From: Saccostrea cucullata
Taxonomy: Eukaryota
Reading direction: 5' to 3'
NCBI RefSeq assembly: GCF_032062105.1
Contig: NW_026934762.1
Location: 1 to 61,426, forward strand
Length of the DNA stretch: 61,426 nt
Shown: positions 7,465-36,700 of the stretch, in pieces
Numbering within the stretch: the first letter of the stretch is position 1
How the letters are laid out: each line of letters begins with the position of its first letter
Made by a program: the position numbers and the translations under genes
The notes under the pieces: generated by a model
Seen by the model: the letters and a program-made list of their open reading frames with translations, nothing else
The model's database searches: none
What the model was told of the DNA's origin: nothing

Positions 7465-8190
7465 AGAAACACCTTTTGATTTTAAGATGGTTTTAAGCTG
7501 GAAAGATGCAATAATTAAACGAACCTCATTTTTAAAATCGGCTGATATCGATACCACGCCTGCTAAAACATGCTGCACCAGTCATACACAAATCTATCTC
7601 TTATTTTATCAATGTCAACATTTCTACAGGAATATTTCCAAATCAATTAAACATTTTTAAAGGTAACGCCTAAATACAGAAAAGGAGAAAAACTTGATCC
7701 TGGTAATTCTAGGACAATATCTTTCTTCCCGTATTTGTCGAAACTAATTGAAAAACATGTTGGTAATCACATCCCTAAATTCTTATGAGACTTTTATTTA
7801 CTTTGGAAATCACAATCAGGTTTCAAAGAATCACAATCATGCCAAGCTGTTCTTATTAAATTAATTGATAAATGCTTTCAAGCAACGGATACTGGTGAAC
7901 TTGTCGGTGTAACCTTTCTTGATTTCAGTAAGGCTTTTGATTTTGTGAATCATAATATTTTGATTAAAATCTTAAGCATAAAAATTGGTTGTCTCAATTT
8001 TAAACTGTGGATTTCAGAGTGTTCAACTTGGAAGTATAAAATTTGAAAAAAAAACAGTTAGTCACAGCAAGAGTGTCACAGGGATCAATTTCAGATGCAC
8101 TTCTTTTTTTTTTAAATCAATGATCTCCATTATTCATTGAAAACTCATATATTGATTAATTTGCTGATGACGCTACTCTTCTCTTTTCCG
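7465..8190 (+). pseudogene. Degenerate non-LTR retrotransposon (L2/CR1-like) reverse transcriptase fragment
   Basis: Frameshifted translation gives KVTPKYRKGEKLDPGNSRTIS, LSKLIEKHV, QSGFKESQSC, GVTFLDFSKAFDFVNHNIL, VSQGS, and FADDATL (~8160). These are LINE RT motifs in the canonical order. Confidence 0.85.
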
Positions 8191-8684
8191 ACAGCAATGT
8201 TTCCTCCGTTCAAATTATGTTATCCTCGGACATAAGTAATATATAGAAACATCCTGTTCTCGGACTCATATGATTTTGAACACTAGTTAAACAAAATGCA
8301 TGTTGTTAGGTACACATCAGAGATTATCAAAACTGACAAACCAAAATCTGAATTTACAATACAATATATAAATCAATTCTTGAGAGTGTCACGCATGAAA
8401 AATTACTTGGAATTCATATTGATAATTTACTCAATGTTACTACACATATCGATGTTGTTTGTAAATCTGTATCTGGATAGATATATGTACGCAGGATTAA
8501 GAAATATCTTACATTAAATACGAAAAAAAAGTTATTCTAAAATGCTTATACCACAATCCAAAACTAAAAGGGAAAATCAAAATTCCCTTTTTTTCACCCA
8601 AGGTTTACAATCTGAAGTCATTTTGGTCTTAAAATCCTTATATGTGTCTCCACAAGTTCCCTTTTTGAAGATTTTTTTAAAGTA

Positions 8685-9481
8685 TTTGAGGAACGTTCCT
8701 CTTTCTACACTTAATATGCATTTGTTATGACCAGAGATTTGAGGAACGTTCCTCTCTCTCTCTCCCTGAACTTCAGATGCATTTGCTATGACCAGACATT
8801 TGAGGAACGTTCCTCTCTCTGAACTTCAGATGCATTTGTTATGACCAGACATTTGAGTAACGTTCCTCTCTTACATGTGCACATACAGCGTGTATTTTTA
8901 AATACTTTAAGAATCTTAACACATGAGACATTTGAGGAACGTTCCTCTCTCAAATTCACTTTTTCTAAAGACATCTCATGAATGGTCAAACATCAGGCAT
9001 TTGAGGAGCGTTCCTCGCTCGAATTTAATTATTACTGTAGGCATCTCAAGGATTGTCAAATATCAGGCATTTGAGGAACGTTCCTCTCACAAACGGTTGT
9101 CTCATGAATTGTCAAACATTAGGCATTTCAGGAACGTTCCTCACTAAAATTTAACATTGTTCACACAGGATACTTACATGTATGAGGAACGTTCCTCTCT
9201 CAGATTTGTATATGTTGATACCTTATTCATATTAAATCAGGCATTTGAGGAACGTTCCTCTCACAAATGGTTGTATTTCTGTTGATAACTTATACCTCAT
9301 GAAGCTTGCAACCCGTGCATTTGAGGAACGTTCCTCTGTCTTGTAATGAATATCTGTTGATACATTGCAAAGCCCACTTAAAAATAACTTTAAAAGAACG
9401 TTCCTCTCTACTATTATCATGTGTTTTGTGATATTATATTAGTTTTTATCGTACATGAAGAATTTGGGAAACATTTCTCTC
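8685..9481. repeat. Left subterminal array: ~13 copies of TTTGAGGAACGTTCCTCTC with spacers of variable length and sequence
   Basis: Copies near 8685, 8738, 8799, 8852, 8931, 9000, 9070, 9126, 9181, 9244, 9320, 9390 and 9463, with period ~53-80 bp. Confidence 0.9.
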
Positions 9482-10205
9482 TTGCAGTACATATTCATAG
9501 AAACATTTTTTATCTGTACACACTCTACAAAATATTTATGAAAAATCAGTTTGTCATTTTATAAAGTACTTTTTGAATTAAGGCTTTCTTAAAGCATAAT
9601 ATAAACTAGGTACAGGAACAAACAAATTTTTCACTTCGGAACAAGCATGTGCAATGTCCAGTGTTCAAGTGTCAACTAAAAGGGCTTTTTCACTGAATGG
9701 CAGTGTGATCACATATTACAATGTCTCGGTTAACAGGTTAATACCCACAGTATTTTTCCTTTCTACCACGAAATTAAACCAAAGTTGTGATGAAGGTCAA
9801 CCATGTTTCTTTCTCGGTTACATCTTTCCCTCATAATAGAGACGATTCCAATTCCTTGGTCTCCAAAGGTTCATAGCATTTTTTCATCAGTCACAGTAAA
9901 ACAGCCTCAACAAGTTTCTTGGGTGTCATCTTCTGTAGGAAAAATCTCACATTCAGTACAGCGGCATGTCGTATTATCAAAGACGTGATTTAGAATAATC
10001 GAAACAATGTGTACATAATAACAAGTTTGGATGTCTCATCTAAAAATTAAATAGACTGGAAAAATCGATATTAAAAAAAATGCAAAACTTAAATTAAAAT
10101 TTTGAACTTTAAATTGCCCATGATTTATGAAAGTATTTCCATACCGTATTAAGAATATTGCAAAATTGACACTTTGTATCTTTCTCATACTATTTTAATG
10201 AAATA

Positions 10206-10354
10206 CTGTAAATGTTTTATATTTAGAGTGTACTATATTTGGCGGAAGTTGATATTTTAATAAGTTAGAGTAGGTATGATTTAGCGCATTTTAATGTTTT
10301 ATGTTTAAGACATTTAGCGTTGTACTTAAATTACCAAATGTAACACGTTTACAG
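10206..10354. mobile_element. Small MITE nested in the foldback element
   Basis: TA|CTGTAAATGT ... ACACGTTTACAG|TA. Confidence 0.55.
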
Positions 10355-13300
10355 TAATAACTCTGATTTGCAAATTATGTCTGAGAAAAATCATTCTCCT
10401 TTATATCTTGCATGTAACACTAATTTAAAAAGTAAGTGACAATTGGACATGTAAATTATAATAATATATAGGTCTTAAGCCCCATACTCCTCCAATGAAC
10501 ATTTTATATACATGTATGATAATATAAGTCTTCAAATTTTAAAAAAGTTTAATTTATTTCTCTTTTTCCATAGTGCATGCAGCTGTCAAATAATATTTCA
10601 TGGGTTTTATTAATGTATTCTTTAATTTACACGAACCTATTTTCATTCTGAATCTCAATTTGTATTATATTGTAGTACTATTGTGTATTTCTTAAAACTG
10701 ACGAATTGATTCTATAATAGGGATTTGTCTAGTTACCCTAAGTCCTGCATCATTCTTTACTTTAAAGATAAAGACTTTGAGACCTTGATGTCTTCCTGGC
10801 CCCAGCTCACTGTGTAATTGTTATTAATCACTGCCAATCATATATGCTCATGGAACACTAGCTATAGGCGATCAGCTCTGGCAACTATCTGTCCCCTGTG
10901 ACTTCATGGACAGTAAAGATCAGTGCTGATGCTATGATCACTTGATCGTGTTATAGATAAACATGTCTCTGCAGTCAGAAAATTGAAGCAAATTACATTG
11001 TAGAAAAGAACTAAAACAGTGAGGGAATTAAGATCTTGTTAGAGTTTTAAATTTTACTCCTTAAAATTTGGTTAGTTTCAATATATTTAAAAAACAAAAA
11101 ATGTAATGAAATTTATATACGCTGTAAAACTTTACTAATTATTCTGGCTCGGGAATAACAAATCTCAGGCCAAAGAAACATTCCACAGAATTATTTTGTA
11201 AAAAAAATAATAATAATGTGAAAACAACATCTCCTGCACTTAATTGTCAGATCTTAAGGAAGCAGAAATAAGAATCCATATTTCCAAAAAAAAAAGCCCT
11301 TAAAAAATGTTTTATTGATTTAGAATATTTTATTCAATTATTAGCACATGTATTAAAAGAAATGTTATACTGAGTAATACAGTTATACAATGTTTTGTTT
11401 TATTGATTGGCTATTGCTCATCTTCCTTCCCCCTTTTCAAAGTTAGATACTTTGATAATGAAACTTTCTTTTATTTAATTGTTAATTTCAGAAATGTGCA
11501 CTCTGAATTTCACAGATTTCTTATATCTTGGATTGCAGTGTGGGTCATTTGGGATTTAATAATTTAGCCAGCTGCAGCCAGGTCAAAAGTTTATGTTATC
11601 TGTAAAACTTCAGGTCAATTTATTAACCCCGGTCTTATCTGCTTTCATTATGTAAAAAATAATTTAAGAAGATTTTCTTCAACTCTTTGAAATTACATTC
11701 ACCAACACTGGAACACTGAGTTTCTAAGAATAAGAATTTCATTGGTGTACATATCAGGCTTGTGTTATAAAAATGAACCTTTCTAATGAAACTGAATAGT
11801 GCATTTTTTCTCCGCTTTAACCTTATAAATAAATAATTACAAAATTACGGTTATATGCATTAAATGATGGAAGTATCAACTAGTGAAACCGTTACTCGTA
11901 TTTTTAGTAATACTATTTTTCTTTTATTAGGGACCGGACACTGAATGCACAAGACATGATCTGCCGATCGACCATTACTGACATATAAAATGTTTAACTA
12001 ATATACAATTTTTTAAGATCTGAATTATAAATACTTATTTATAATTAAATAATACATATACTTAATTTATTGTTAAAGTATTAAATAATCCTTAACAATA
12101 GGTGTATGTAGGAATATAAACAAGATGCCACCTTTGGATTTTTTTTAGAATAAAATATATTTTTCAATGGGATAGTGATGATTGACAACTAAAAGAAACT
12201 TCAGATTCACTCTATTTTGGATTGAATTCCACTTTGATTAATATTAAAAATCTGTTAAAACAATCAATGCAATACATAAAATGTGACTTTGTATTTAATT
12301 ATTTATTTATTTTTTTTTTAGAAAACATGGAAAAGATTAATATATAGAATGACAAAAAAAACCTTTAAGATAAAGGTTTTGTTATATATGTTTCTTTAAA
12401 TTGTACACGTGTACTTAAGCTTTGATCATAATCCTTGCAGTTGACAACACAACAAAATATGCCTAGAATTTTTATTAAAAAAAAAAATTCCCGGTAAATT
12501 GTTTCAAAAAAGTGTTTAAATCTTTAATAATTAGTTTTTTTTAATTTTATCCTTATTATTCTAACTGCAGCATATAGTGTAAAAGGATACAATATTGAGT
12601 ATAATAATTTATTGAATTTGTGTCTTTTTTTCCATAATATTTCAAGATAACCAATTTGTAGTAAAATTTTAACATGTTTTTATAGCAGGGTATGATATCA
12701 GACAAGGTCACTATAATGCTAGCAAAGAAAAACACATGATTTTAATATATAAAGTACTCCTGATCATACACACAATTGCAAGTAAAAGAGCTAATGATAT
12801 CTTGAAAAAGAATAAACATTTGACCAGTGATCACTTAGTGAAGCCGAGGAAGCGATAATTGTCTCAGAGTCTAAGATTTCAGCATTGACCATACATAAAC
12901 AAACTATATGGCTCTGTTTCATCTAAACACATTAATTCTTTGACACACTAGATTATTCCCTTGAGCCTCGTTGAATGTGTTCTGCTCTGCTCTAAAACCA
13001 TCAGAATTAACAGTGCTGAGCATCTAGTGATTTGGATTGAACTAGGTGAAACATAGCAATAGTTCTCTTTATCAAATCAATTAATGTTTTATTAAAAAAA
13101 AGCAAATAAGACACTGACTTGGCATATAAAATATACCAGGTCTGTCCAAAACTTTAATTCAAAATAGAGTGTACGTCTCTTATCAATAATGTATAGTTAA
13201 TACATGGACATGTTAAATCATGCCAGTTTACAAATTAAAAAAATATACCCGGTAATACAAATTAAAAACACTACATAAATCTGTATATTTTGCATATTTT

Positions 13301-13830
13301 TCGAAAGTATATAGGATAAGTTCAGTGGCAGGGGGGGGGTTAATTTTTTAAGGAGCAAATTCTCAATCAAAGTTTCCTGTGTTAGGAAGCCAAAAAAATT
13401 AGTATGGACACGGACCCCACCCATCCCCACTCCCACCCCCTGACCCCCACCCCCAAAAAAGAAAAAAAATAATAAATTAATTGAGATAAGTAAATGATGA
13501 ATAATTAAAATAATTAACAAATCACAGTAAAACATGATTTTTGCCAACACACTAATGTTGAATTGAGTTACAGCGAAGTGCTTTTATTCCCTGTGTCTTA
13601 ATTATGTATTTTTATCTTCATAACGAATTTCGCTCATAATAATGCAAAATCATCTGTCGATCCCTGGCACTGCTTTTTAAACATGTTTTACTTGTATTCA
13701 ACATAATTAATCTATTTTCTGCCATGTACAGCATTTGATAACATATATTATATAGGAATTCATAGAATTTCTAATTTTCCCAACTAATAATGAAAATTAT
13801 GACTACGGTACTTACTTGATTTGTTTAGGA

Positions 13831-14550
13831 CACTTTCATCATTTCTCTGAAATGTTACTGCAAGTGGTGTCATGAGGGTATTCGTTTTCTTTTACATTGA
13901 AATCCAGGGCATATCATTTTTTCTGAAATTAAAGTAAATTTCTCATTTTAATTTACTGGTATTTGGAAGTGTCTGACAGCTTATATTTCAGCAGAATTGC
14001 TCAACTCTGACTAAGTTATTGATATAATATTTTATTTTAGTTTTTATGCAAACAAAGCATACAAAGAATTTTCATAAATTGATATTATTTGCATATATAC
14101 CTTAATAAATCCTTAACCGTGAAGAACTACAACATCCTGTTTTATTCAACAATCTTTCGATGTGATGAGCATCTTCTGAATTGAAATCGTGAACGTTTTG
14201 GTAGGGTTGAGAGACGGATGTGTTGAAGACTGATAACACACCCAAGATTATCAGTGTGCAGTGTTTTGATTGACATTTCTTCAGTTAATGGCACCACATG
14301 TTTCCATTCAAATATGTATGGAAGGGTCGCAGTTGCACATGTGAACAGCTATCATTTAAATGCAACTGTTGTTTGAAGGGGAATTCGAAATTGGAGAAAT
14401 TAGACATTGGTATTTCTGCGTGTTATACTGTGAAAAAGTTATAAAATTAGTTTTGGTCAAAAAACTGCGTGATGAAGTTAGTAGAAACACATGCATGATT
14501 TTCAAATGTCAATGGATGTTCAACTTATGGAGAATTTACTGGTCAATGCA
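13831..14550 (+). pseudogene. Heavily eroded CACTA/EnSpm-like transposase C-terminal region
   Basis: 13831-13910, with one frameshift, reads HFHHFSE(N)VTASGVMRVFVFFYIEIQG, matching the H..H....V...G.......F..E spacing around the CACTA catalytic Glu. 14284-14375 reads VNGTTCFHSNMYGRV...NSY, followed by EIGEIRHWYF, resembling the NG..(F/Y)HS..Y.R...NS...(F)G.I..F tail of these transposases. Confidence 0.5.
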
Positions 14551-14894
14551 CTGACTTTTCATAAATTAATCTTGGATGAACTATACTAAAAAAGCTAAAA
14601 GTAAGAATACTTTTCCTGAAAGATTTTTTCATTTAATAAATACATTGTATCATAAAATTTCAATTGTTAAAGAAAATTGTTTATTTTAGTGTACGAAAGC
14701 ATATATTGCTTTATACAACAGTTTTATATCATAATGATAAATGCAAGGGACCAGGGGAATGGTATAACTTTTTTTATCAATTCCTTGTTGTAGATTTATT
14801 TCTCTTGCACGATTGAAACAGTTGCCCTTTTTTCTCATTTAAAATAAAAATAAACATTTACTCTTTATTCAGCAGATATACATTCCTATATCCA

Positions 14895-15375
14895 GAGAAG
14901 TGACCTAATGACCTCAAAATAAAATGTGATCATGTATACTCCTAAAGGAGTGGTACCAACGAGTTTAATGTCTGTAATAATAAGAGGCTTTTCACAAAAT
15001 TGACTGAAAATTGATTTCCTAAAATATGTTAATTGTCAAGAATGACACGTACTTGATCTTGTGATCGAGTTATGACCCCCAAATCAAAAGTGGTCATATA
15101 TTTCTCAGGAGGACTACAGACCTAGTGCATTAAATTATTTTTCAAACATTAGAATCTCAAGTTACTTAAATATTGAGTAAACAATACTTTTTCTAATTCT
15201 AGATCAGTTTGAGCCTTGTGCTTTCGCCTTGTAACCAAAAATCAGTAGGGGTATACTAAGTTTGAAGTCCGTAAAGCAAAGGGTTCCCAAAATTTTAAGC
15301 AGACATTATTTTTCTGTGTCGAATAGTCTCAACCTTGAAATTTGAATATATGAATTCAACAGGGTTATCTACTCT
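14895..15375. repeat. Degenerate ~160-bp TGACC-type repeat remnants
   Basis: Recurrent TGACCTCAAAAT / TGACCCCCAAATC / TAACCAAAAATC heads at ~14909, 15074 and 15232, each followed by similar blocks. Confidence 0.4.
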
Positions 15376-15507
15376 TTTACGTTAGGGAGTACCTGGGTGT
15401 ACAGCTTTCTTCAAATCCAATTATACTCTGATTCATGTATAAAGTTATATAATAACATTTGAAATCAGAAGATCAGTATTCGATATGAATCCATTGTCAA
15501 TAGTTGG

Positions 15508-16693
15508 AAGAGAATGTTCCTCCAGTCCAGTGTCAAATTTTGAAATGGGGAGAGGAACGTTCAGTGTATTAAGATTCATGGTTGTAGTGTTTTTTGATAG
15601 GAATTGGTAGAGGAACGTTCCTCAAATGTACTGTTTATATACATGTAGTATGTATTATCAATTGAAATTGACTAATGAACGTTTGTGATATTGTGTGTTA
15701 AAACTTGTAAATACAGTGTCAAGTTAAAAGAGGAACGTTCCTCCAGTGTATATAGTGTCAATGTTTGAAATTGGATGAGGAACGTTCCTCAAATATGTTG
15801 TGTTTAGACTAGTTAATCCAGTGTCAATAGTTTGAAGAGGAACGTTCCTCCAGTGTACATGGTGTATATAGTATCAATATTTGAAATTGGAAGACGACTC
15901 TTCCTTTAATGCCTAATATTTGAAAATTCATGAGATGCCTACGGTAATAAGTAAATTTGAGAGAGGAATGTTCCTCAAATGCCCGATGTGTTCATTCATA
16001 AGGTATTTAAAAATACACACTGTATGTGCACATCTGTAAGAGAGGAACTTTACTCAAATGTCTGGTGATAATAAATGCATCTTAGTTTAGAGAGGGGAAT
16101 GTTCCTCAAATGTTTGGTCATAACAAATGCACCAGAAGTTCAGAGAGAGGTAGTTCCTCAAATCTCTGGTCATAACAAATGCACCAGAAGTTCAGAGAGA
16201 GGAACGTTCCTCAAATGTCTGCATAGTCATAACAAATGCACCAGAAGTTCAGAGAGAGGAACGTTCCTCATATCTCTGGTCAAAACAAATGTGTAGAAAG
16301 AGGAACGTTCCTCAAACGTTTAGTCATAACAAATGCACCAGAAGTTCAGAGAGAGGAACGTTCCTCAAATGTCTGCATGGTCATAACAAATGCACCAGAA
16401 GTTCAGAGAGAGGAACGTTCCTCAAATCTCTAGTCATAACAAATGCACCACAAGTTCAGAGAGAGGAACGTTCCTCAAATCTCTGGTCATAACAAATGCA
16501 TCTGAAGTTCAGAGAGAGGAACGTTCCTCAAAAGTCTGCATGGTCATAACAAATGCACCAGAAGTTCAGAGACAGGAACGTTCCTCAAATCTCTGGTCAT
16601 AACAAATGCATCTGAAGTTCAGAGAGAGGAACGTTCCTCAAAAGTCTGATCATAACAAATGCATCTGAAGTGTAGAAAGAGGAACGTTCCTCG
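15508..16693. repeat. Right subterminal array: ~20 copies of AGAGGAACGTTCCTCAAA; the outer part is a homogeneous 53/57-bp minisatellite
   Basis: Unit AGAGAGGAACGTTCCTCAAATCTCTGGTCATAACAAATGCACCAGAAGTTCAG repeated over ~16090-16690. More divergent spacers over 15508-16050. Confidence 0.9.
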
Positions 16694-17989
16694 AATACTT
16701 AAAACAAATCTTCAAAAAGTGAACTTGTGGAGACACATATAAGGATTTTAAGACCAAACTGACTTCAGATTGTAAACCTGGGGTGAAAAAAAGGGAATTT
16801 TGATTTTCCCTTTTAGTTTTGGATTGTGTTTTATATAATGCAATCAATTGAATACAGTTTCACAATTTGAGGTAATGCATCAATATCTAACATCCAGAGA
16901 ATTCATAAATTACAGAAAAAGACAGGGCGCTGTGTCCTAGATGATGCCTATGACAGGCCTTCATAACACTAATTTAAAAAAAAAATGTTTGTCAGGACAT
17001 GAAGAATTGACTATAAATAAGTTAGTATTATTGAAAAAAAGCTTTATGATTGAAGTCCAAACTACCTGTCTGATATGCTCAATTTCTGATCATCCATTTC
17101 CTACCATATAAGACATATTTCTAATTTTGACTTGTGTGTTTCAAAGCCAAACATATTGAAATGTCTCAAAATTCTTGTAGTATTGTAGAATGACGTACAC
17201 CACACTGGGGGAGACAACTCTTGCGATTTCAATTGAACGTTTGACGTAACGTCAAATTTAGCGTTGGTAATAAAGCGTTATGATGACAAATACTACGATC
17301 ACTGTGTATCAAACATAAAAGAAAATGGAACATGGGACTTGATTGTGATTATGAGTACCACAATCAATCCATTGTTTTTTTTTTTTTAATTAAACTGATT
17401 TACGCCCGTGAAAAATAAGACACAAAATATCATCCCTTGATATTTATTTCATTTCAGACACAATAAATTGTGTTCTTAATCAAAGTATAGCATTTTCTTT
17501 TCCTTAATATTTTATTTTAGCCTACATTGCATAAATTCTCGTTATGTACAATTGGCTACGTAATAACGTTCCGATTAATTGTGTATATTATAATTTGCAC
17601 ATACACGATATAAATATTGTTTTGTTTTTCTTTAATTAAAAAACAACAACACCAATAAGCAAACAAAAACTTTTTACAACAACGATGTCGTTTTCAGAGC
17701 CTTACTTATCAAAGAGGAACAACTCTAAAAATGTGGGTTTGTTTTCCTCCCTTTATTCACTGTTTTCCGCATACATGTATAGAATCAGCATCAATTAATA
17801 GAATCAGATACATTTACAGCAAGACCTGATAAATCCGAGAATTGGATAATATAGACCTAATACACACGATGTAAGTATAGGAATTGGAAAGGAATTGTTC
17901 ATTAGTACTGCAATTATCTGGATTTATGAATATGCAGCAAATCGTTTGACTTTCTATCATTGTCAACAATGTCGGTTCGGATTTCCTCG

Positions 17990-19618: not shown

Positions 19619-22600
19619 TCACTCCCGTCGACTCAAATAATCAGCTCCAACGTTTTCCTTTCCCCTTATTGCGATAATACGGAATCTATAGTGCTGAAGA
19701 AGTAGTGCCCACCTCATAAGTCTGGAATTCACAAGTTTAGTCCGGTTAAGATACACCAATGGATGGTGATTTGTCTCCAACACGAACTCCTTACCATAGA
19801 GATATCGGTGGAATTTCTGGACCGCCCATACAATACCTAGACATTCCTTCTCAATGGTAGCATAGTGTTCCTCACTGGGTTTCAACTTCCGGCTTGCATA
19901 AGCTACGGGTAACTTGATATCGTCTTCCTCCTGTAACAGAACTGCACCTAACCCTTTGTCAGAGGCATCCGTCTGAAGAATAAAAACTTTTGAAATATCT
20001 GGTAATTTCAGTATAGGTGACTTTGTCAAGGCTGATTTTAAATGTTGAAATGCAATTTCCTGTGATTCAGTCCATTGAAGTTTATTTGACGAGAATTTCC
20101 TTGTAAGATCTGTTAAGGGAAGAGCAATATGTGCAAAGTTGGAAATAAATTTTTGGTAGAAATTTACCAACCCTAGGAAGGATCGCAATTGTTTCTTGGT
20201 AGTTGGACGACTTGCCTGTTGTATTGCTGATATCTTGTCGGGATGAGGTTGCACTTTGTCACCTCCAACGATGTGTCCTAAACACTCCAGTTCTTTGTAA
20301 CCCACAGAACACTTGGTTGGTCTAGCAGTAAGGTTTGCTGCACGTAGACGCTGAAACACTTCGGAAAGCACAAGAACATGTTTATCAAACGTGTCAGTGA
20401 ATATAAGAAAATCGTCAATGAAATTATCAACGTTTGAAACATTGTGCAAAACCTCCCGCATAAGTCGACAAAATGTCGCTGGTGCGGTAACTAAACCGAA
20501 TGGCATTTTAGTAAACTGAAAAAGCCCTAAAGGAGTTTGAAAAGCAGTTAAAGGACGAGCAGACTGAGTAAGTGAAGTGGCACCTGCCAATAACTCTTAG
20601 AAAGATCTAGACGTGAAAAGAACTTGTGACCTGACAATATTGCAAATATCGCATCCATATCTGGCATTGGCTCTGCGTCAAACACATTAATTCGATTAAG
20701 TCCCCTGAAATCTACACAAAACCGATAAGTTTTGTCTTTCTTCACAACCAAAACAATAGGTGACGAATAAAGACTTTCTGATTCTTCTATGACCCCCATC
20801 TCTAACATTTTACTTACCTCCTCCTTAACCCTTTCTATCATTGCAAATGGAATTTGCCTAGGACTTACTCTAATGGGTTTGTCTGTAGTTGTCCGTATGT
20901 CATGTTCCAATACATGGGTGTGACCTGGTTTGTCACTCAAAACGTCACTAAAACTATGCAGAAGTTCCATCAAAGTCTCCCTCTCCTGCTTACTCAGGTC
21001 TGGGTTCAAATCTACATCCTTGTATGTTTCTACCTTACATGAATCTACATACCCTTCTTGTTCATCTCCGTACTCCGACTCATCAATTTTATCTGAACTG
21101 ACAACAGACATTGCAGAACTTACCAATGGAACTGAACGTTCAATATAACTTTTCAACAAATTAGCATGATAGGTTTTGAGTTTTCCATTCATGTCTAATT
21201 GGTAGTCAACATTACCTATCTTCTTGACAATTTGGAATGGCCCTTTCCACTGCATTAACAGCTTATTACTGTCAGTAGGTAGTAAAACTAAAACTTTCTC
21301 ACCTGGCTTCATGTTACGACTTCTTGCTTTCTTATTGAAGTAAGCTCTGTGTCTCCTAAATGCTTTCTCCAGATTCTGATGGGCCAGTTCACAGGTTGAC
21401 TCTAACCGGTCTCTGAGATCAAATACATATTGATAAGTGGACTTTACCTGTGAATCCTGTATTTCCCTCGTCCAAAGGTCTTTGAGAATCGTCATAGGTC
21501 CTCGAACAGTGCGACTGTACACTAGCTCAAATGGAGAGAAGCCTAAGCTTTCTTGTGGTACTTCACGATATGCAAAGAGGACGGCTGCTAGGTACTTGTC
21601 CCAATCCTTTGGTCGATCGATACACATCCTCTTTAACATCTGTTTCAACGTACCGTTAAACCTTTCCACTAGTCCGTTACACATGGGGTGGTACAGTGTT
21701 GTCGTCAGCTGTTTCACTGAAATTAGCCTACTTACCTCCATCGTAAGTCCAGATGTAAATTGTGTACCCATGTCTGCAAGAACCTCCTCTGGTACCCCAA
21801 TACGCGAAAACATTTCTAATAAAGCCTCTGCAACCCGTTCAGTATCTATACCTGGGAGCGCTATAGCCTCTGGATATTTCGTTGCGTAATCTACTAAGGT
21901 TAATATAAATCGGTTACCTTTATCTGTCGCCGGATGCAATGGACCGATTATATCTACTGCCACTCTCTTAAATGGTACATCTATCAGAGGCATTCTGTCC
22001 AGCGGGACTTTGCTCACCTTACCTTTTGAAACAGTTCTCTGGCACGTATCACATGATTGATAGAACCGCTTAATTTCAGATTGCATACCAGGCCAAAAGA
22101 ATTCTGACAAAATTCTGGATATAGTCCTACCTGTTGCTAGATGACCTGACATAACTGATTCGTGTGCTAGCTTCATAACAATCGTTCGAAATTTAGAAGG
22201 TACTATGAGCTGTGAAAAAGCCTTACCTCCTTCCTTTTCCGATGCTTGATACTCCCTGTACAAAAGTCCTCTTTTCTCTAACCATCCTACCTTCCCATTA
22301 CGCGATATGAGACCTTCTTTTGCATTCCGACGTGATGTTTCAATGGATGGATCTGCCTGTTGTTCACGCTGTATATCCTCAGGTTTGATATCATCCTTGA
22401 CTATATCTGGAACTCTAAGAGCTGGGTAAGGTTTCTTCTTTTCTCTTGCTTGCCGTCGAGTCTCCACTGCTAAGACAGTCTTTGGTCTCCACTCTGGGTC
22501 GGGATCATGGGGTTTCCTTGCGTCATGTACCTCTCCAATGATCAAATCAAAAACAGGGTTTTCCATACACCAAACCTCAAATTCACCTGTCACATATGGA

Positions 22601-23919
22601 GAATCTATAAATACCTTTGCAAGTGGCACAATTCTCTTGGTATTATCTGCTAAAATACAAGTCTCACTTTTACCTGTTAAACTTTCATCTTTCACCAAGC
22701 TTCTCCTTACCACAATATTTTGACAACCAGAATCTCGAAGAAGTGTGACTGGTTGACCATGTACATATCCAGCCGAAAGTGGCATTGGTTTCCTAGTGCT
22801 GTGACATGCTGAAGTTAAAATGGTTGATTTGTCATATACCTGCGAGTACAGAACCGAGTTCTCACTGCAAACAAATGCAGAACAATTCTCTGTTGTTTTG
22901 TCAACGTCTCTGCGCTCATCTTTATGTACTAGCGCACCTGAAATCTTACCTTTGGATTTGTGGCACTGTGGAGCTATATGACCCTGCTTACCACAAATGT
23001 AACATTTTCTCTCTGTCACTGGAACGAACGAAGACTTCTGGTTTTGGGGTCGTTGCTGTAGATCTTTAGGTTTTACTTGCGTCTTACTTACTTGTACTTC
23101 CGTAGGTTTCTTCATAACCTTCGAACATAGATTTGAAGCGCTTGTGTTTCTCGCCTCTCTAAATTGGTCTGCTAGAATGCATAATTCATCTGCCGTCTTT
23201 GGGACGTTCTGTTTAAGAAACACCAGCAAATCATAATTGCACTTATGTAAGAACTGATCGCGAAGTGTAAGTTCAAAGAGAGCTTCAAAAGTCATAGAGA
23301 TCTTAGACATTTCTATCCAACGAGTAAGGTAAGAACCTAATCTGACAGTAAACTGAGAAAATGTTTCACCATTTTCGGGACGACAAGAACGAAACTTTCT
23401 TTTGAAACCTTCTCCCGTCATATCATATCTCCGGAGTAACGCTGCTTTGAGCTCATCATAATCATCTGCTTTTGACTTTGACATTAAAGCATAAACCTCT
23501 AAAGCACGACCTTAAAGTAAATCACTCAAATGAGTTGACCAAAGAGATTTTTCCCATTTCATAGCTGTTGCATACCTTTCAAATCTTCGCAGATAACTAT
23601 CCATCTCATCTCTGTTCTCTTCAAATGATGGAATTTTAGGGGTACTTGGTTTGACTGAGTTAATACTCACCTCATTCACTGATATGTTACCCTTCGTTGC
23701 CATTTCCATATCGTGTTCATCAGCCATCTGTTTCAGCTTAAGGTCATTGTACATACGTTCCAATTGTAGTTGGTACTCACGTTCATCTTTCTCCTTTTGA
23801 CGAACTGCCGCTCTTTCTTCACGCTGCAAAGCTTGTTGATCGCTCACATATTTGCGTAAAGTATCGTCTTTATAGCCTAGTCTTTCTCCAGCAGAAATCA
23901 ACTCCTCTAAAGTCTCCAT
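19619..23919 (-). pseudogene. gag-pol: Gag-Pol polyprotein (SCAN-like capsid, CCHC, protease, integrase, RT, RNase H) with one stop and one frameshift
   Basis: Likely start METLEEL at 23919. Motifs: YLRRFERYA; zinc knuckle CYICGKQGHIAPQC; protease LRDSG; integrase AHES...GHL...CDTC, VAVDIIGP, ADMGTQF, GLVERFN; RT YSSPIVLVVKKD, RFCVDFR, MPFGL, FIDD; RNase H LQTDASDKGLGAVL, EKECL, ADYLSR. TAA at 23514-23512; frameshift at ~20575. Confidence 0.95.
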
Positions 23920-24639
23920 TCTTAACAAAAATGTCAAATGTACACAACAAAGTGTATTTACTAACTCACTACTCTGTAAACATGTTTGACATACTACTAC
24001 TACTATACACAATACTGAAGTGTTGAGTTTGGGTGACACAATTTTTAATAAATTTAACTGATTTACTACATTACCATGACCAGTCTCCACAACACACTCT
24101 GAAGTAGCTTGGCAATCAGCTTTTAAGGAAGACTTCTGGATCCAAAATAGCCAATGATCTTGTCCTACAATTACAGCAATCACAATGAAACAATTGATAC
24201 TATGCAACATGGAAAAGCACGAATGATCATCTGTTCAAAAAGATGATAAATAAAATGCAGTTTACTTTAAACAGAATAAATACTTCTGAAAATACAATCT
24301 GTTTCAGATAAATAGAGTTTCAGTTATTCAGTTTTACTTATGATTTAACACTTCAAGAATTCCTGGTTTAGTCAGTTATAATTTTTTTTTCTGTCTGTAT
24401 CCTGTTTGCCTTATCCTATAAACGGGTCTGTATCCATGGATTGTCACGTGGACGTCTCCTGTTGATAAGTTCCGCAATAAGACAAGTTGTTGAATCTACA
24501 TCATCGATACAACACACTCTCACTGGAATCCTGGGATCTGTATTAATGGTGATAATCTATGGATCCCTGGAACAAAATTCCTGGATCTCCCTAGGTTGAT
24601 CTCCTGGGCAGATCGCCTTGGGTGGATCATCCTGGGCGT

Positions 24640-30434: not shown

Positions 30435-33400
30435 ATGTCTATTCCCTACACCATCATGGCGGAGAAGAACGTGGTAGCGGATGACCCTCACACCACCGAG
30501 GACGGCGTCAAAGAAGAAACAGACCCTGAGCCGACAGAGGAAAGAAACACCACACCATCAGAAACAAGTGAGAAACGAGTAAGAACATTGACAGTCAAAG
30601 CTAAAGAACTTTACGATGCTGAAGTTAAGAAATCCAACTCAAAAATCGACTTAATATGGACTGATATAGAGAACATTCCTAGTGAAATAGAAAACATTGG
30701 TCATAATACACAAGCATTGCGTGTTCTGGGTTCCAGACTTGACTATCTTGGAGATAGATATGAGGAAGAGTGTGTGTCATTTCGTGAATATCTCACCCGA
30801 AGAAATACAACAGAAAGCCAGCAGGAGTTGGACTCCCTCATGGCCTCCCTTGACAAAGGAAAAAGTATTATTCAGGAATTACGGAAAAGAATCAGGGATA
30901 CTCGTATGGAAGCAACAGAAACTGCCTCACGGAGGTCCGCTTCAGTAAGGACGTCGTCATCCCATGTTGATTCAATCCTGTTCAAGAAACGTGTGGAAGC
31001 AGAAACGCAACGTGCTAACATTCTATTCCGAGAGAAGGAACTTGCGATCCTCAAAGAAAAAGCATCACTTAAGGAACATGAAGCAAAACAACAAGCTGAG
31101 AACTTGAAGCTACTCATCACTTGTTAGAAGAAAAAAGAAAAGCAGCACTCGTAAAAGCAGAAGTGAAAGCAATAGAGAACTTTGAGTCGGACACTAGACA
31201 AGGGTTTGTTATACCATCAGATATCGATGTACCGATAAATCGCAAACAGTTTACTGCTCGTTACATCAGCGATCAAAGTGATACAGTGCAGGGAACTAAT
31301 TTTGTTACATAAACCAGCATCAGGATCAGCATAAGTAGGATCAGGATAGAACTAGCATCAGCATCAGCATTTAAAAATCAGCATTACTGGATCAGCATCA
31401 GCAAGCAAAGGATAGAACTAGCATTGACCAAAGTGAAAACAGATAAAGGAAAGTCATTTAATACAAATTACAAATAAAAATTACCCCAAAAAATATTTTT
31501 AATGGCTTAAAATAGCGATGCTGTTTTTTAATTATCCACTTCCGGCAGGATAATCCTACTTCTGGTAGCATTACAAGCATTGACCTAGTTTCAAACCAGC
31601 ATCAGGATAAGGATCAAACCAGGATCAGGATAAGGATAACTAGCATCAAAATCAGCAAGCAAATGAAGCATCAAAATCAGCAAGCATAGGAAGCACCAAA
31701 ATCAGCATTGATGCTGTAACAAAATTATTTCCCTGCACTGTAATAGTATCTTCGCTAAACAAACTTCAGATTGTGATAATGGTTCCATAGATCCAGTGAT
31801 TGATCATGACATACCACATCAGAAAGAGACTCAGTCTAACCTGAACCCTATGGCAAAAGAATTTGTTAGTCAACATGTGAAAAATTCTGAAGATCAGAAT
31901 GTCGTCAGTGATCTTACAAAATTTCTACTCAAGAAGGATCTGTTATTCTCAAGATTTTCGCAGTTCAGTGATAAACCAGAAACATTTGTCACATGGAAAG
32001 CCAGTTTCAAGAGTATAACAGAGGAACTGAGAGTTACACCGTTTGAAGAAATGGACTTACTAGTGAAATTCTTAGGACCAGAATCCTCAAAGTTTGCAGC
32101 CAGCATCAGAGCAGCAAATACAGCATACCCAGAACGAGGCCTTCATAGGATATGGAAAAGACTCCAAGAAGGTTATGGAAGCCCTGAATTAGTAGAACAT
32201 TCTTTAAAGAACAAACTCAGAGACTTCCCTAGAATTAGTAACAAAGACAATAAACGTTTGTATGAATTAGTCGACATTCTAGCAGAAATCGAGTCTTTGA
32301 AAGAAGATTCAAACTACTCGACATTACTGTCCTACTTTGACCCATCTTCTGGCATTATACCTATTGTGAATAAACTGCCTTTTAACTTACAAGAGAAATG
32401 GACAACCCGCGCCGCAAGCTACAAAGCCAGACTAGATGTTCCACATCCACCATTTGATTATTTCGTGGAATTCTTACAAGAAATGAGTAAGATTAGAAAC
32501 GATCCGGGATTTCAATATGAAGGATCCTTTAGTACCCCTGGACCAATCCAAAACAGGAAAACCAAAAATACTACAGTTCTGTCGTGTAAAACTGAAGTGG
32601 AACCAAACAAGTATGTGTCTCCCAGAGGACAAAGGTGCCCTATTCATAACACGCACCACAATGTTAAAGATTGTAAAACATTCCGATCTAAACCATTATC
32701 TGAGAGGAGGAAGATCTTGAAAAACTCTGGATTGTGTTTTCGATGTTTGGACTCGAATCACTTAGCTCGTGACTGTAAAACAGTAGTGAAATGTGAGAAC
32801 TGTGAAAGTGACACTCATAATACTGCGCTCCATGACTACTACAGATCCAAACACTCAGATCAAGGCGGGGAGAAAATCAACCACGATAAGACAGATGTGC
32901 AGAATAAGTGTACCGTGATATGTGGAACGAACTTTAAGGGCAAATCGTGCTCTAAAACTATTCTGGTCAACGTTTACCCCACTGATCGTCCATCAGAGAA
33001 AAAGACTATCTATGCCATAGTTGATGACCAAAGCAGTCGTACACTCGCTCGTTCACAGTTTTTCAACATGTTTGATATGAACACTGACTCTGTGACTTAC
33101 ACACCATCATCATGCAACGGTTCTGTGACACTCACTGGCAGATGTGCATCAAACTTTACCTATGAACCAGTATTGGAGGGACACCGAATTCATCTACAGT
33201 CTGTGATAGAATGTGATGACATACCCAACTGCAGAGAGAAGATTTCCACACCAGATGTGGCACGTGCATACCCTCATCTAGCAGACTTAGCCACTCATAT
33301 ACCTGATCTAAATGAAGAGGCAGACATTTTGTTACTCATTGGAAGAGATCATCCAGATGCTCATCATGTCCTAACACAGATAACTAGACCTCATGGAGCT

Positions 33401-33778
33401 CCGTTTGCACAAAAACTATCGTTAGGATGGACAGTTATAGGAGAGTGTTGTCTTGATAAGGTACATGTACCTACGAACATTGTGACCAACAAAACGCACA
33501 TTCTACCATCAGGAAGAAGCTCGACTTTTCCAACTTGTCCTTCTTACATACATGTGTCTAAAGTTGCAGACAACCCATTCTGTAGTGACGAAATAATGAC
33601 TTCTGATATTTTTGTGAAAACACCCCAGGACAATGAACCAGTCCTGTCAGTGAATGATCGAGAATTCCTAAAAATTAAGGAAATGAATGTTACAGAGATG
33701 AGAACGGAAACTGGACTGCTCCGCTTCAATTTAAGACCAGTAGAGAGAAACTTCCGAATAATCGTGAACAAGCCATGA
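30435..33778 (+). pseudogene. gag: BEL/Pao Gag + aspartic protease region, frameshifted and MITE-interrupted
   Basis: Coiled-coil N-terminus; FSDKPETFVTWKASF; three Cys/His knuckles CPIHNTHHNVKDC, CFRCLDSNHLARDC and CENCESDTHNTALH; protease YAIVDDQS; LLIGRD. Frameshifts at ~31120 and ~33690. Confidence 0.92.
31284..31740. mobile_element. 457-bp MITE nested in BEL gag
   Basis: TA|CAGTGCAGGGAACTAATTTTGTTACA ... TGTAACAAAATTATTTCCCTGCACTG|TA, with internal AGCATC/AGGATC repeats. Removing the element plus one TA (459 nt) rejoins the gag frame. Confidence 0.93.
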
Positions 33779-36700
33779 AAAGAACTCTGTCATTTCTAGC
33801 TTCTTGTAAAAGGAACAAGTTGAAAATGGAACATGCAATCTCGTTTATGGACAAAGTGTTTTCTAAAGGACATGCAGAAAAGGCACCAGCGCTTAAGGAC
33901 GGGGAAGAGTGTTGGTTCCTACCGATCTTCGGCGTCTACCACGCAAAGAAGCAAAACCAAATACTTATGGTTTTCGATTCATCTGCAGTATTCCAGGGAC
34001 ACTCCCTGAATTCAGCTCTTTTAAGTGGACCCGACCTTACCAACAGTCTACATGGGATTCTACTAAGATTTAGAAAAGAGAAAGTAGCTGTGACTAGTGA
34101 TATTGAACAAATGTTTCACTCATTCAAAATTCGAGAGGATCACAGAAACTTTGTACGATTTATTTGGTTCACAGACAATGACCCAGATCTACCTTTAATG
34201 GAATATCGTATGTGTGTTCACCTATTTGGAAACTCACCTTCTCCGGCAGTGGCAACGTATTGTTTGAGACAATGTGTTAAGATCAAGGAGTGTGACCCAA
34301 GAGTTCGTGAATTCGTTAACAGAAACTTCTATGTAGACGATGGTCTCGCATCTTACCCAACGGAAGATGAAGCATTAGAAATCTTAAAGAAAACACAGAC
34401 TACACTCAAAGAAGAAGGAAACTTGAGGTTTCATAAGTTTGCATCAAACAGCTCGTATATCATGGATGTACTACCTCCAGGCGACAGGGCTAAAGATTTA
34501 TCTGACGTGGATTTACACTTAAATGCAGCACCATTACAACGGAGTCTGGGACTCATGTGGAATGTAATGTCTGACGCATTCACCTATCAATTTGTACCCA
34601 GGGTCAGGGACCCTCCGCTAACAAAGAGAGGAATTCTTTCATGTCTGAACAGTCTGTACGATCCACTTGGATTTATAGCCCCTGTGATTCTGCAAGGCAG
34701 ATTCTTATTTCGTGAAGTGATAAACTTACCTGTTGGATGGGATGACATGGTTCCATTGAATATCGCCAATGGACGGAAAACTTTGTGCAACACTTTACAC
34801 TATCTGTCGAGTTTACAGATTTCTAGAACTATCGTGCCAACTTCCCTGGGAGAAGACACTCGAAAGGAGATACACTTCTCAGATGCTTCAGAGAGAGCCG
34901 TTTGTGCAGTGGCTTACTTACGTGTGATACCAAATGACAATGCATCCATGCAGGTCGGATTCTTGATGGGAAAGTCGAAACTTTCACCCCAACATGGTCA
35001 AACAATTCCCAGACTTGAGCTGTGTGCAGCAGTGTTGTGTACAGAACTCGCAGCATTTGTGTTAAAACACATAGACACTACTATTCATGAAGTGAAGTTC
35101 TATACAGATAGTCGCATAGTCCTTGGATACATCTACAACCAAACCAAACGTTTCAATACTTACGTTGCTAACCGAGTACAGCGTATCCGTCAGCACTCAG
35201 CTCCAGATCAGTGGAACTATATTTCCACTGAGGAAAATCCTGCGAATGTCGGGAGTAGAGGAATTCTTGCGAATGAACTACCTCAGAGCATGTGGCTTCA
35301 AGGACCCGTTTGTTTACAACACAGTTATCTATCGGAAAAAGAGGATTTTCCACTTATTGACCCAGAAAAAGACAGCGAAATTAGAAACACTAACGTCGTT
35401 GTACAGAAAACATGTTTCAACGCCCATGAAGTCTACAACAGGATAGATAGATTTTCCTCATGGACATCCTTAGTCAGAGCAATTACCGTTCTCCGAAAAG
35501 CTGTGATGAGGAAACTTGGTTTACCATTGTTGGACCCTGTACACGTGAACAGTGCAACAGAACTGTTCCTAGTGAAACTCTGTCAAAATGAAACATTTTC
35601 TGCAGAAATCACAAACTTGGTCAATGACAAACCAGTATCTAAAGATAGCTCGTTACGCTACCTGGATCCTTATCTTCATGATGGAATCATACGACTAGGA
35701 GGGAGAATTCGTACTGGAGACGCCCTGTCTGACGAACACGGCCCAATCATTATTCAAGGAAAAACTTACCTAGCTCGTCTTCTCGTTCTACATTGTCATG
35801 GAGTTGTGAAGCACCAGGGAAGACATCTAACCGAGGGAGCCGTTCGCTCATCTGGATATTGGGTGATTGGTGGAAAGAGATTAATATCGTCAGTCATACA
35901 TTCCTGTGTTACTTGTAGAAAACTTCGAGGTAAACTGGAACATCAGAAGATGGGAAATCTTCCGTCACCTCCATTTACCTATGTGGGCGTGGACACATTC
36001 AGACCTTGGGAGATTGTTACGCGCAAGACCAGAGGAGGTTCAGCTAATAGCAAACGCTGGGCTATCTTATTCACCTGCCTGACAAGCCGAGTCGTACATA
36101 TAGAGCTAGTGGAAGATATGTCATCACCTACGTTTATCAACGCCCTCAGACGTTTCATAGCCATAAGAGGAAAAGTTAGAGAATTTCGCTCGGATAGAGG
36201 TACAAACTTTGTCGGCAGTACAGACGCACTAAGAATCACTGCAGTCAACATAGAAAGTTCACCAGTGAAGAAGTTCCTTACAGATAGCGGATGTTCTTGG
36301 ATCTTCAACCCTCCCCACTCTTCCCACATGGGAGGGGTGTGGGAGAGGATGATTGGCATCGCTCGACGAATCTTGGATTCTATGCTTCTAAAGGAAACAA
36401 AGAAAAACCTTACACACGATGTGTTAAATACCCTCATGGCAGAAGTTACTGCAATTATAAACAGTCGACCGATAGTACCTGTATCAACTGATCCGTCTCA
36501 ACCCTCTGTACTATCTCCATATACCTTGTTAACGCAGAAGACAGAACTAGACGTTGGACCATTTGAGCCATTTGATACAAAGGATATGTACAAGTCCCAT
36601 TGGAAATGCATACAAATCTTAGCCGACCAGTTCTGGAGGAAGTGGCGCTCACAGTACCTCCAGTTGTTACAGTCAAGACGCAAGTGGGTGGACTCTCGAA

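What the first reader, a model, noticed from the sequence alone, without database searches (positions are those of the whole stretch)
8552..16828. Large foldback element with ~35 palindromic sites in inverted subterminal arrays
Seen: an 8.3-kb unit with CAC...GTG ends. Each arm has ~130 bp of unique TIR and then an array of the perfect 14-bp palindrome GAGGAACGTTCCTC. The flanks (TTT on one side, TC on the other) give every copy a polarity that is mirrored between the arms. Established: CACTA/EnSpm elements use subterminal repeats as binding sites for element proteins, and Foldback/Galileo-type elements have modular long TIRs. Inference: a CACTA-derived family that has taken on foldback architecture. 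This is the best candidate for an undescribed system in the window.
Basis: partly seen in the sequence, partly recalled or inferred. Interest (0 to 1): 0.8.

Follow-up and report, generated by a model that had tools for sequence, protein, structure and literature searches.

The report
Non-autonomous oyster transposon with palindrome arrays
This is a real, young, multi-copy 8.3-kb jumping-DNA element without a transposase gene; each end carries about 15 copies of a 14-base palindrome that most likely binds the missing transposase, so it is a new family of a known kind, not a new system.

Summary
The inserted DNA is window 8550-16830. It has a perfect 138-bp unique terminal inverted repeat, then arrays of GAGGAACGTTCCTC: 12 sites on the left and 18 on the right, 30 in all at 3 or fewer mismatches, not about 35. 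It is one of several dozen copies in a 1.17-Gb oyster-like genome. That genome holds 73 matching ends and 1045 exact palindromes, against 1 for a reversed control. Seventeen independent full copies share one 8.3-kb non-coding backbone and lie 1.4-4.4% from their consensus. The longest open frame in the consensus is 98 aa, and Pfam finds nothing. The true termini are 5'-AACAC...GTGTT-3'. The target duplication is 4 bp (11 of 17 pairs perfect, 2 pairs 5 bp), with target consensus TAY|NTAN|RTA. Twenty-seven paralogous empty sites fix the boundaries. The CACTA reading fails on duplication length and terminal sequence. A 4-bp duplication with RR...YY termini is the published Kolobok signature, but the TTAA specificity is not met and no autonomous partner was found. 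Superfamily assignment is therefore tentative. The palindromes as phased (53 bp) transposase-dimer binding sites is an inference. A spliced minus-strand RNA crosses the interior.

The parts
8546..8549 (.). Left target-site duplication TTAT
   Evidence: It matches 16831-16834. Homologs of the left flank in 27 empty sites end at 8550.
8550..16830 (+). Whole inserted element (8281 bp), 5'-AC(AA in other copies)CAC...GTGTT-3'
8550..8687 (+). Left unique terminal inverted repeat (138 bp). It contains an inner inverted repeat AAAAGGGAA (8566-8574) / TTCCCTTTT (8583-8591) that shares the GGAA/TTCC half-sites.
   Evidence: The two arms are identical over the first 140 bp in the family consensus. The sequence was read.
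8688..9406 (+). Left array: 12 sites of GAGGAACGTTCCTC (8 exact). The outer units have a 53-bp period; the inner ones are 55-79 bp apart.
9407..15551 (.). Interior: 6.1 kb, 25-35% GC, non-coding, conserved among copies
   Evidence: No ORF longer than 121 aa (stop to stop). Pfam finds nothing in 102 stop-free pieces. The consensus has no ORF above 98 aa. Rfam gives nothing above threshold.
9245..9932 (-). Last exon of a spliced minus-strand transcript (acceptor ...TTTTTCCTACAG| at 9933/9932)
   Evidence: The joint 9932->13816 is seen in the RNA runs X13 and X23, and an X13 contig covers 9245-9932. The sequence was read.
13816..14051 (-). Upstream exon of that transcript (donor CAA|GTAAGT at 13816/13815). 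The upstream limit was not seen because the stretch laid ended at 14051.
   Evidence: All three frames carry stops just before the donor in the family consensus, so the exon is probably non-coding.
15552..16692 (-). Right array: 18 sites (12 exact), mirrored polarity; the outer 9-10 units have a 53-bp period.
16693..16830 (-). Right unique terminal inverted repeat, ending ...GGATTGTGTT
16831..16834 (.). Right target-site duplication TTAT
   Evidence: Homologs of the right flank in empty sites start at 16831.

Best explanation
Window 8550-16830 is one copy of a young, several-dozen-copy family of non-autonomous cut-and-paste DNA transposons in an oyster-like genome. It carries no transposase gene and must be moved in trans.

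Each end has a 138-bp unique inverted repeat that carries the cleavage end (5'-AACACAATCC). About 15 copies of a 22-bp asymmetric site follow, whose core is the 14-bp palindrome GAGGAACGTTCCTC. The outer sites are spaced 53 bp apart, about five helical turns, so they face the same side of the helix.

I infer that each palindrome binds a dimer of the DNA-binding domain of the missing transposase. The two mirrored arrays would load many dimers, bring the ends together and hold the 8-kb element in a paired-end complex. Integration makes a 4-bp (rarely 5-bp) staggered cut in an AT-rich palindromic target, TAY|NTAN|RTA.

The combination of a 4-bp duplication and 5'-RR...YY-3' termini, with CACA just inside, points to the Kolobok superfamily, which is abundant in bivalves. 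This step is tentative.

Shown: mobility, boundaries, duplication, copy number, absence of coding capacity, and restriction of the palindrome to this family.
Inferred: the binding role of the palindromes, and the superfamily.
For: - Arrays and inverted repeat.
- Family size: 73 ends at 2 or fewer mismatches to a 34-mer; at least 124 candidate ends; 1045 exact cores genome-wide against 1 for the reversed control; only 1 core with non-family (S...S) flanks; 460 polar 19-mers, + in left arms and - in right arms.
- Copies: 20 full copies were fetched, 17 of them independent. All have the same backbone plus unrelated nested insertions or deletions. Copies lie 1.4-4.4% from the consensus, evenly over ends and interior.
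- No coding capacity.
- Duplication: 4 bp perfect in 11 of 17 pairs, 5 bp in 2, and no other register fits.
- Termini: AA at -2/-1 in 43 of 43 and 42 of 43 ends. Target preference: T at -9 in 30 of 43, A at -8 in 25, C at -7 in 19, T at -5 in 29, A at -4 in 23.
- Empty sites: in 27 contigs the homologs of the left and right flanks abut with a 5-base overlap, including C3748 at 99% and 95% identity.
- Core versus spacers: the core is invariant while the spacers of the inner units are unrelated (relative entropy 1.4-2.6 bits over the core against 0.2-0.6 beyond +/-10).
- Kolobok signature: 4-bp duplication and RR...YY termini; KolobokP families duplicate 3-4 or 4-5 bp and are rich in bivalves (PMC9587614). 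KolobokP consensus ends read GG(N0-3)CACA.
- Precedent for many transposase-domain sites in long inverted repeats: Galileo THAP (PMC3688188, listed).
Against: - No autonomous copy was found. All 20 full copies and 28 of the 30 end loci checked run straight into the same non-coding backbone; two (L009, L011) depart from it about 1.2 kb in.
- No protein has been shown to bind the palindrome.
- Kolobok is described as TTAA-specific. Here only 1 of 43 duplications is TTAA, with a centre-TA preference only.
- RR...YY is a weak signature, met by chance about one time in four.
- The terminal 10-mers and the palindrome are absent from the KolobokP supplementary sequences.
- Sola2 also makes AT-rich 4-bp duplications, AWWT (PMC3627910).
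- Pfam has no model for Kolobok, Sola or Academ catalytic cores, so a highly decayed relic of one would have been missed.
Confidence: 0.55

Rival explanations
1. The element belongs to another superfamily that makes 4-bp duplications (Sola2, Ginger1/2, AcademX, Chapaev-3-like CMC), or to an undescribed lineage. The palindromes are still transposase sites.
For: The 4-bp AT-rich duplications average A-T-A-T, which resembles Sola2's AWWT. The mix of 4 and 5 bp matches Ginger2's '4 or 5 bp', and AcademX makes 3-4 bp. The Kolobok TTAA rule is not met. No transposase is available to settle the matter.
Against: The Sola2 ends seen (GAG/GAA..., TGTT...) are unlike AACAC. Ginger ends are TGT...ACA, not met here. 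CMC would need CAC at the very tip and usually 2-3 bp. RR...YY plus CACA fits Kolobok ends.
Confidence: 0.3
2. One reading: a CACTA/EnSpm-derived family that adopted foldback architecture.
For: CAC...GTG lies near the ends. The subterminal repeat arrays recall the TnpA sites of En/Spm (established knowledge). The inverted arms are long.
Against: 0 of 17 pairs have a 3-bp duplication abutting CAC. The duplication is 4 bp and lies outside AA/TT. The terminus is AACACAATCC, not CACTA. No Transposase_21/24 or any other domain is present. A 6.1-kb middle is not foldback-like.
Confidence: 0.06
3. The palindromes act mainly as host-factor or regulatory sites, or as structural elements, rather than as transposase sites. 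The core contains GAAnnTTC (heat-shock-element-like) and GGAAnnTTCC (Rel/ETS-like).
For: The resemblance of the core to these motifs is from my own knowledge and was not tested. The interior is transcribed and spliced. About 30 sites per copy is far more than most transposases need.
Against: The sites sit exactly where transposase sites sit: subterminal, mirrored, starting at the same base on both arms. The core occurs essentially nowhere else in a 1.17-Gb genome, which argues against a general host-factor motif. Polar flanks are conserved.
Confidence: 0.08
4. An assembly artefact or a segmental duplication rather than a transposon.
For: The assembly is fragmented and contains haplotigs.
Against: There are 17 independent copies in different flanks, each with its own 4-bp duplication, and 27 empty paralogous sites. 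The family is present in DNA runs from several studies and under two species labels.
Confidence: 0.01

Closest known systems
Kolobok superfamily (Kapitonov and Jurka; lineages in Kojima and Bao 2022, PMC9587614)
   Same: 4-bp target duplication. Termini 5'-RR...YY-3'. CACA just inside the tip, as in several KolobokP consensus ends. Abundant in bivalves; KolobokP families duplicate 3-4 or 4-5 bp.
   Different: The target is not TTAA (centre-TA preference only). It has long inverted arms with palindrome arrays instead of short inverted repeats or long terminal direct repeats. No transposase or accessory gene is present. No sequence match to published KolobokP ends.
Galileo (P superfamily) and Drosophila Foldback elements
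   Same: Long, internally repetitive inverted arms. In Galileo there are multiple binding sites for the transposase's DNA-binding domain along the arms (PMC3688188). Many copies lack a transposase.
   Different: Duplications of 7 bp (Galileo) and 9 bp (FB) against 4 bp here. Different termini. This element has a 6-kb conserved non-coding middle. The site is a perfect 14-bp palindrome.
En/Spm (CACTA) subterminal TnpA-binding repeats
   Same: A short motif repeated many times in both subterminal regions, in mirrored arrangement, next to a short terminal cleavage sequence.
   Different: 3-bp duplication and CACTA tips in En/Spm. There the motif is a 12-bp non-palindromic sequence in mixed orientation. 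The superfamily test is not met here.
Sola2
   Same: AT-rich 4-bp duplications (AWWT) and large elements (PMC3627910).
   Different: Its terminal sequences are unlike these. Subterminal palindrome arrays are not known to me in Sola2.

Membership tests
Kolobok | 4-bp target-site duplication | tested here: met
   11 of 17 independent pairs are perfect at 4 bp, 2 pairs at 5 bp, and no other register fits.
Kolobok | Duplication specific for TTAA | tested here: not met
   1 of 43 ends has TTAA. The consensus is N-T-A-N, with T in 29 of 43 and A in 23 of 43 at the centre. KolobokP families are reported with 3-5 bp duplications.
Kolobok | Termini 5'-RR ... YY-3' | tested here: met
   AA...TT in 42-43 of 43 ends. 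The TT lies outside the empty-site homology.
Kolobok | Kolobok-type DDE transposase (C/DxxH motif, zinc finger) | not testable with these tools
   The family has no coding capacity. No autonomous partner was found.
CACTA/EnSpm (CMC) | 3-bp (2-4 bp) duplication abutting CACTA...TAGTG termini | tested here: not met
   0 of 17 pairs at 3 bp abutting CAC. The terminus is AACACAATCC.
CACTA/EnSpm (CMC) | CMC transposase (Transposase_21/24 and related) | tested here: not met
   No Pfam hit in 102 interior pieces or in 125 pieces of the nested inserts.
Foldback / Galileo type | Element made almost wholly of long internally repetitive inverted arms; 9-bp (FB) or 7-bp (Galileo) duplication | tested here: not met
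   The arms are about 1 kb each out of 8.3 kb, with a 6.1-kb middle. No pair is perfect at 7 or 9 bp.
Transib / RAG-like | CACAATG-type heptamer at the very tip, 5-bp duplication, RAG1-like transposase | tested here: not met
   CACAATC is present but preceded by AA that belongs to the element. A 5-bp duplication occurs in only 2 of 17 pairs. There is no coding capacity.
hAT | 8-bp duplication, hAT dimerisation domain | tested here: not met
   0 of 17 pairs at 8 bp. A remembered likeness of minus-strand pieces to the hAT C-terminus got no Pfam support, and the consensus has stops in all frames there.
Sola2 | AT-rich 4-bp duplication (AWWT) and Sola2 transposase | tested here: inconclusive
   Duplication length and AT-richness fit. 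The ends are unlike the published Sola2 ends. No transposase is available to test.

The most novel reading that the evidence does not exclude
The family is driven by an as yet undescribed transposase lineage: either a Kolobok branch with a relaxed NTAN target or something outside the known superfamilies. Its DNA-binding domain would bind a 14-bp palindrome as a dimer and polymerise along about 15 helically phased sites per arm, a filament-like paired-end complex that allows 8-15-kb non-coding elements to move. The driver is absent from this assembly, which would mean trans-mobilisation by a diverged element or a lost or horizontally supplied source.
Probability: 0.15. Interest if true: 0.5.

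Novelty: new member of a known kind. Interest (0 to 1): 0.3.

Why it matters
For annotating this oyster genome, the work defines a clean young family. It supplies a consensus length, exact ends, the duplication rule and the target motif. It also explains about 1000 otherwise puzzling perfect palindromes.

More generally, the family is a tidy natural example of a transposon end built from one cleavage sequence plus many phased dimer sites. If the driver is found, it could serve to study how site number and helical phasing help synapsis of large elements.

It also shows that CAC...GTG ends alone do not make an element CACTA or Transib: the true tip and the duplication had to be fixed from empty sites. 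It does not reveal a new kind of system.

Tried and rejected
1. Transposase inside the element. There are no long ORFs in the window copy, in three long copies, in 20 copies or in the consensus. Pfam on 102 stop-free pieces found nothing.
2. The longer copies (10.7-15.3 kb) as autonomous versions. Their extra segments lie at different backbone positions, are unrelated to each other and have no transposase domain. They are nested insertions.
3. End loci running into a different interior. 28 of the 30 checked run straight into the same backbone; L009 and L011 leave it about 1.2 kb in and were not followed.
4. hAT relic. Minus-strand pieces near 9890-9932 and 14105-14284 recalled the hAT C-terminus. 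There is no Pfam support, and the consensus has stops in all three frames before the splice donor. Dropped.
5. Other duplication models. A 7-bp model (A-CAC ends), 5-bp abutting, 8/9-bp TTNNNNNAA, TTAA, and Spy-like insertion between AA and TT were all rejected against 43 flanks and the empty sites.
6. Rfam on 8000-17500 gave only a sub-threshold U3 chance hit in the array.
7. Metagenome and viral collections searched with the polar 19-mer gave 4 single chance hits and 0 hits.
8. KolobokP supplementary sequences searched for the tip and the palindrome gave none.
9. The literature gave no table of terminal motifs that settles the superfamily.
10. Earlier notes of this scan gave nothing at this place. 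Genome-wide notes gave leads only.
The copies in C2521 (about 14.9 kb), C7584 (about 12.5 kb), C5297, C6856 and C10876 were therefore not read. I did not try to get those letters another way.

A majority consensus of this non-coding DNA transposon family was built only in scratch, for statistics.
Full report
**What is in the sequence**

The region was read directly. The inverted arms 8547-8759 and 16621-16833 are 94% complementary. The 14-bp perfect palindrome GAGGAACGTTCCTC occurs 26 times in the window at 1 or fewer mismatches, against 0.01 expected, and 30 times at 3 or fewer, against 0.89 expected. All sites fall in 8688-9406 (12 sites) or 15552-16692 (18 sites), and 20 are exact. Tandem Repeats Finder shows a 53-bp unit in the outer part of both arrays. 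The count is 30 rather than about 35, and the boundaries need moving by two bases on each side (see below).

**It is a family**

The window is contig C16899 of a 1.17-Gb, 23,869-contig eukaryotic assembly. Earlier follow-up notes of this scan call it an oyster genome; I did not verify this independently.

- The terminal 139 bp gives at least 124 candidate places, and the 40 that were scored are 96-100% identical.
- A 34-mer from the tip finds 73 ends at 2 or fewer mismatches, forming at least 23 pairs 6-15 kb apart.
- The exact core occurs 1045 times genome-wide, against 1 for the reversed control.
- Only one site in the whole genome has the core with non-family flanks.
- The polar 19-mer occurs 460 times. 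In the rows listed it reads + in left arms and - in right arms.

I fetched 20 full copies. Three are haplotig partners of others, at 97.9-99.6% identity, which leaves 17 independent copies. All share one backbone. The longer copies (10.7-15.3 kb) carry nested insertions at different positions that are unrelated to each other. The shorter copies (6.1-6.3 kb) carry deletions.

An alignment gives a consensus of 8310 bp. Copies lie 1.4-4.4% from it in substitutions, evenly over the ends and the interior. The family is therefore young.

**No coding capacity**

- The window copy has no ORF above 121 aa, counted stop to stop (110 aa from a start codon), and that one is low-complexity.
- The consensus has none above 98 aa.
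- Pfam finds nothing credible in 102 stop-free pieces of the interior or in 125 pieces of the nested insertions.
- Interior GC is 25-35%, against 40-45% in the coding retroelements of the same window.
- Of the 30 end loci checked, 28 run straight into the same backbone; two (L009, L011) leave it about 1.2 kb in.

The family is non-autonomous, and no autonomous partner was found. One caveat: Pfam has no models for the catalytic cores of Kolobok, Sola or Academ (PMC5751038). A very decayed relic of one of these could be missed. The consensus ORF result argues against an intact gene in the master copy.

**True ends, duplication and target**

Forty-three distinct outward flanks all have A at -2, and 42 of 43 have A at -1, before CAC. 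The window copy, with AC, is the exception.

Among the 17 independent pairs, the 4 bases outside AA/TT are a perfect direct repeat in 11. Five bases repeat in 2 pairs, 3 of 4 match in 2 pairs, and 2 pairs have no duplication and are probably recombinants. No register abutting CAC, and no length of 3, 6, 7 or 8, fits.

The window copy sits inside another repeat. Homologs of its left flank end at 8550 and homologs of its right flank start at 16831. In 27 contigs the two abut with a 5-base overlap, for example C3748:43519-43817 and 43813-44098 at 99% and 95% identity. These empty sites prove a discrete insertion. They also show that the TT at 16829-16830 belongs to the insert. The fifth overlapping base (A at 8550) can be read either as the element's first A or as target; the family rule favours TSD TTAT followed by AC.

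The element is thus 5'-AACAC...GTGTT-3' with a 4-bp, rarely 5-bp, duplication. The flanks show a palindromic AT-rich target, TAY|NTAN|RTA.

**Architecture of the arms**

In the consensus the two arms are identical for the first 140 bp, about 92% identical to roughly 480 bp, and 81-87% identical to roughly 740 bp in shifted registers. Further in they share only the site itself.

The first site starts at base 137 after CAC on both arms. There are 15 sites on the left and 16 on the right in the consensus. Outer spacing is 53 bp and inner spacing is 47-120 bp.

Aligning all 31 sites in arm orientation gives cATTT-GAGGAACGTTCCTC-TctC. The core scores 1.4-2.6 bits per position, against 0.2-0.6 bits beyond 10 bases on either side. 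The spacers of the inner units are unrelated to one another. The core, not the repeat unit, is what was kept. This is the expected signature of a protein-binding site, though gene conversion within the outer arrays also contributes.

The commonest decay of the core is CG to TG or CA.

The unique terminal part holds a second inverted repeat, AAAAGGGAA-N8-TTCCCTTTT (8566-8591), with the same GGAA/TTCC half-sites.

**How it most likely works**

Shown:
- It inserts with a 4-bp staggered cut.
- It is copied to dozens of places.
- It has no gene of its own.

Inferred:
- A transposase supplied in trans cleaves at the AACAC tip.
- Its DNA-binding domain binds each palindrome as a dimer.
- The 53-bp (five-turn) phasing puts the outer sites on one face of the helix.
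- The mirrored arrays help pair the two ends of a large element.

Precedents are the multiple THAP sites in Galileo's long inverted repeats (PMC3688188) and, from established knowledge, the TnpA sites of En/Spm.

**Which superfamily**

- CACTA fails on duplication length and on the tip sequence.
- Transib fails because AA precedes the heptamer-like CACAATC and because 5 bp is the minority duplication.
- hAT, P, FB and MULE fail on duplication length.
- Kojima and Bao (PMC9587614) state that Kolobok makes 4-bp duplications and has 5'-RR...YY-3' termini. They also report that KolobokP families, rich in bivalves, duplicate 3-4 or 4-5 bp. Their oyster consensus ends read GG(N0-3)CACA. AA-CACA...TGTG-TT with 4 (5) bp fits this.
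- Against Kolobok, the target here is not TTAA, and the tip and the palindrome are absent from their supplementary sequences.
- Sola2 also makes AT-rich 4-bp duplications, but its published ends look different.

I rate Kolobok at about one half, another or a new 4-bp superfamily at about one third, and CACTA well under one tenth.

**Reads**

The stretch is held by runs from ten studies under two coded species labels. Laid on 8052-14051, DNA contigs of both labels cover the element at depths several-fold to about fifty-fold above the first bin of flank (8052-8251); that flank is itself a repeat. RNA runs cover it thinly.

One joint, 9932 to 13816, has skipped ends CT..AC, which is a GT..AG intron on the minus strand. 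It is seen in a metatranscriptome contig and in 11 oligo-dT reads with 5 start places. The donor is CAA|GTAAGT and the acceptor is TTTTTCCTACAG|. The family consensus has stops in all frames just before the donor. This looks like a spliced non-coding transcript, perhaps a remnant of the lost gene's 3' end.

**Verdict**

The finding is real and well defined, but ordinary in kind: a new non-autonomous DNA transposon family with an unusually regular array of palindromic sites, probably Kolobok. The open point is the identity of the transposase.

The two LTR retrotransposons in the window were only observed.

Noticed in passing
window 9245-9932 and 13816-14051+ (minus strand): A spliced transcript crosses the element's interior. 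The intron is 9933-13815, with a GTAAGT donor and a polypyrimidine-AG acceptor. It is seen in two independent RNA data sets. The consensus shows stops in all frames before the donor, so it is probably non-coding.
   Followed up: partly
window 8252-8549 and 16831-17128: The element is inserted in another dispersed repeat: at least 75-81 candidate copies at 75-87% identity, 27 of them giving intact empty sites. One copy, C3748:43519-44098, is 99% and 95% identical and lacks the insert. This is either an insertion polymorphism or a recent duplication.
   Followed up: partly
window 10301-10333: A 33-base stretch inside the interior is flanked by many loose read ends in the RNA runs (38 before, 34 behind in X23). 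It is shared with some abundant transcript or repeat of unknown identity.
   Followed up: no
window 19619-24210 (minus strand): A Gypsy-type LTR retrotransposon. It has a reverse transcriptase / RNase H ORF (323 aa) and an integrase ORF (978 aa) whose N-terminus gives a sub-threshold SCAN-domain match. Observed only.
   Followed up: no
window 30435-36807 (plus strand): A BEL/Pao-type LTR retrotransposon. ORFs of 660 aa and 1010 aa carry Peptidase_A17, rve and DUF5641, plus sub-threshold DUF1759. They appear long and open. Observed only.
   Followed up: no
window 8566-8591 (mirrored at 16789-16814): Inside the unique terminal repeat lies an inverted repeat, AAAAGGGAA-N8-TTCCCTTTT. It shares the GGAA/TTCC half-sites of the array palindrome and may be a split version of the same binding site next to the cleavage end.
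   Followed up: no
L056 (C3516) and L055 (C15950): Two copies lack a direct duplication. In C3516 the two 4-mers are reverse complements of each other (ATTT / AAAT), which suggests recombination or inversion between copies rather than simple insertion.
   Followed up: no
consensus right-arm sites; window 15963 and 16094: Mutated palindromes mostly carry CG to TG or CA at the central CpG, as expected if the sites are methylated in the germ line.
   Followed up: no
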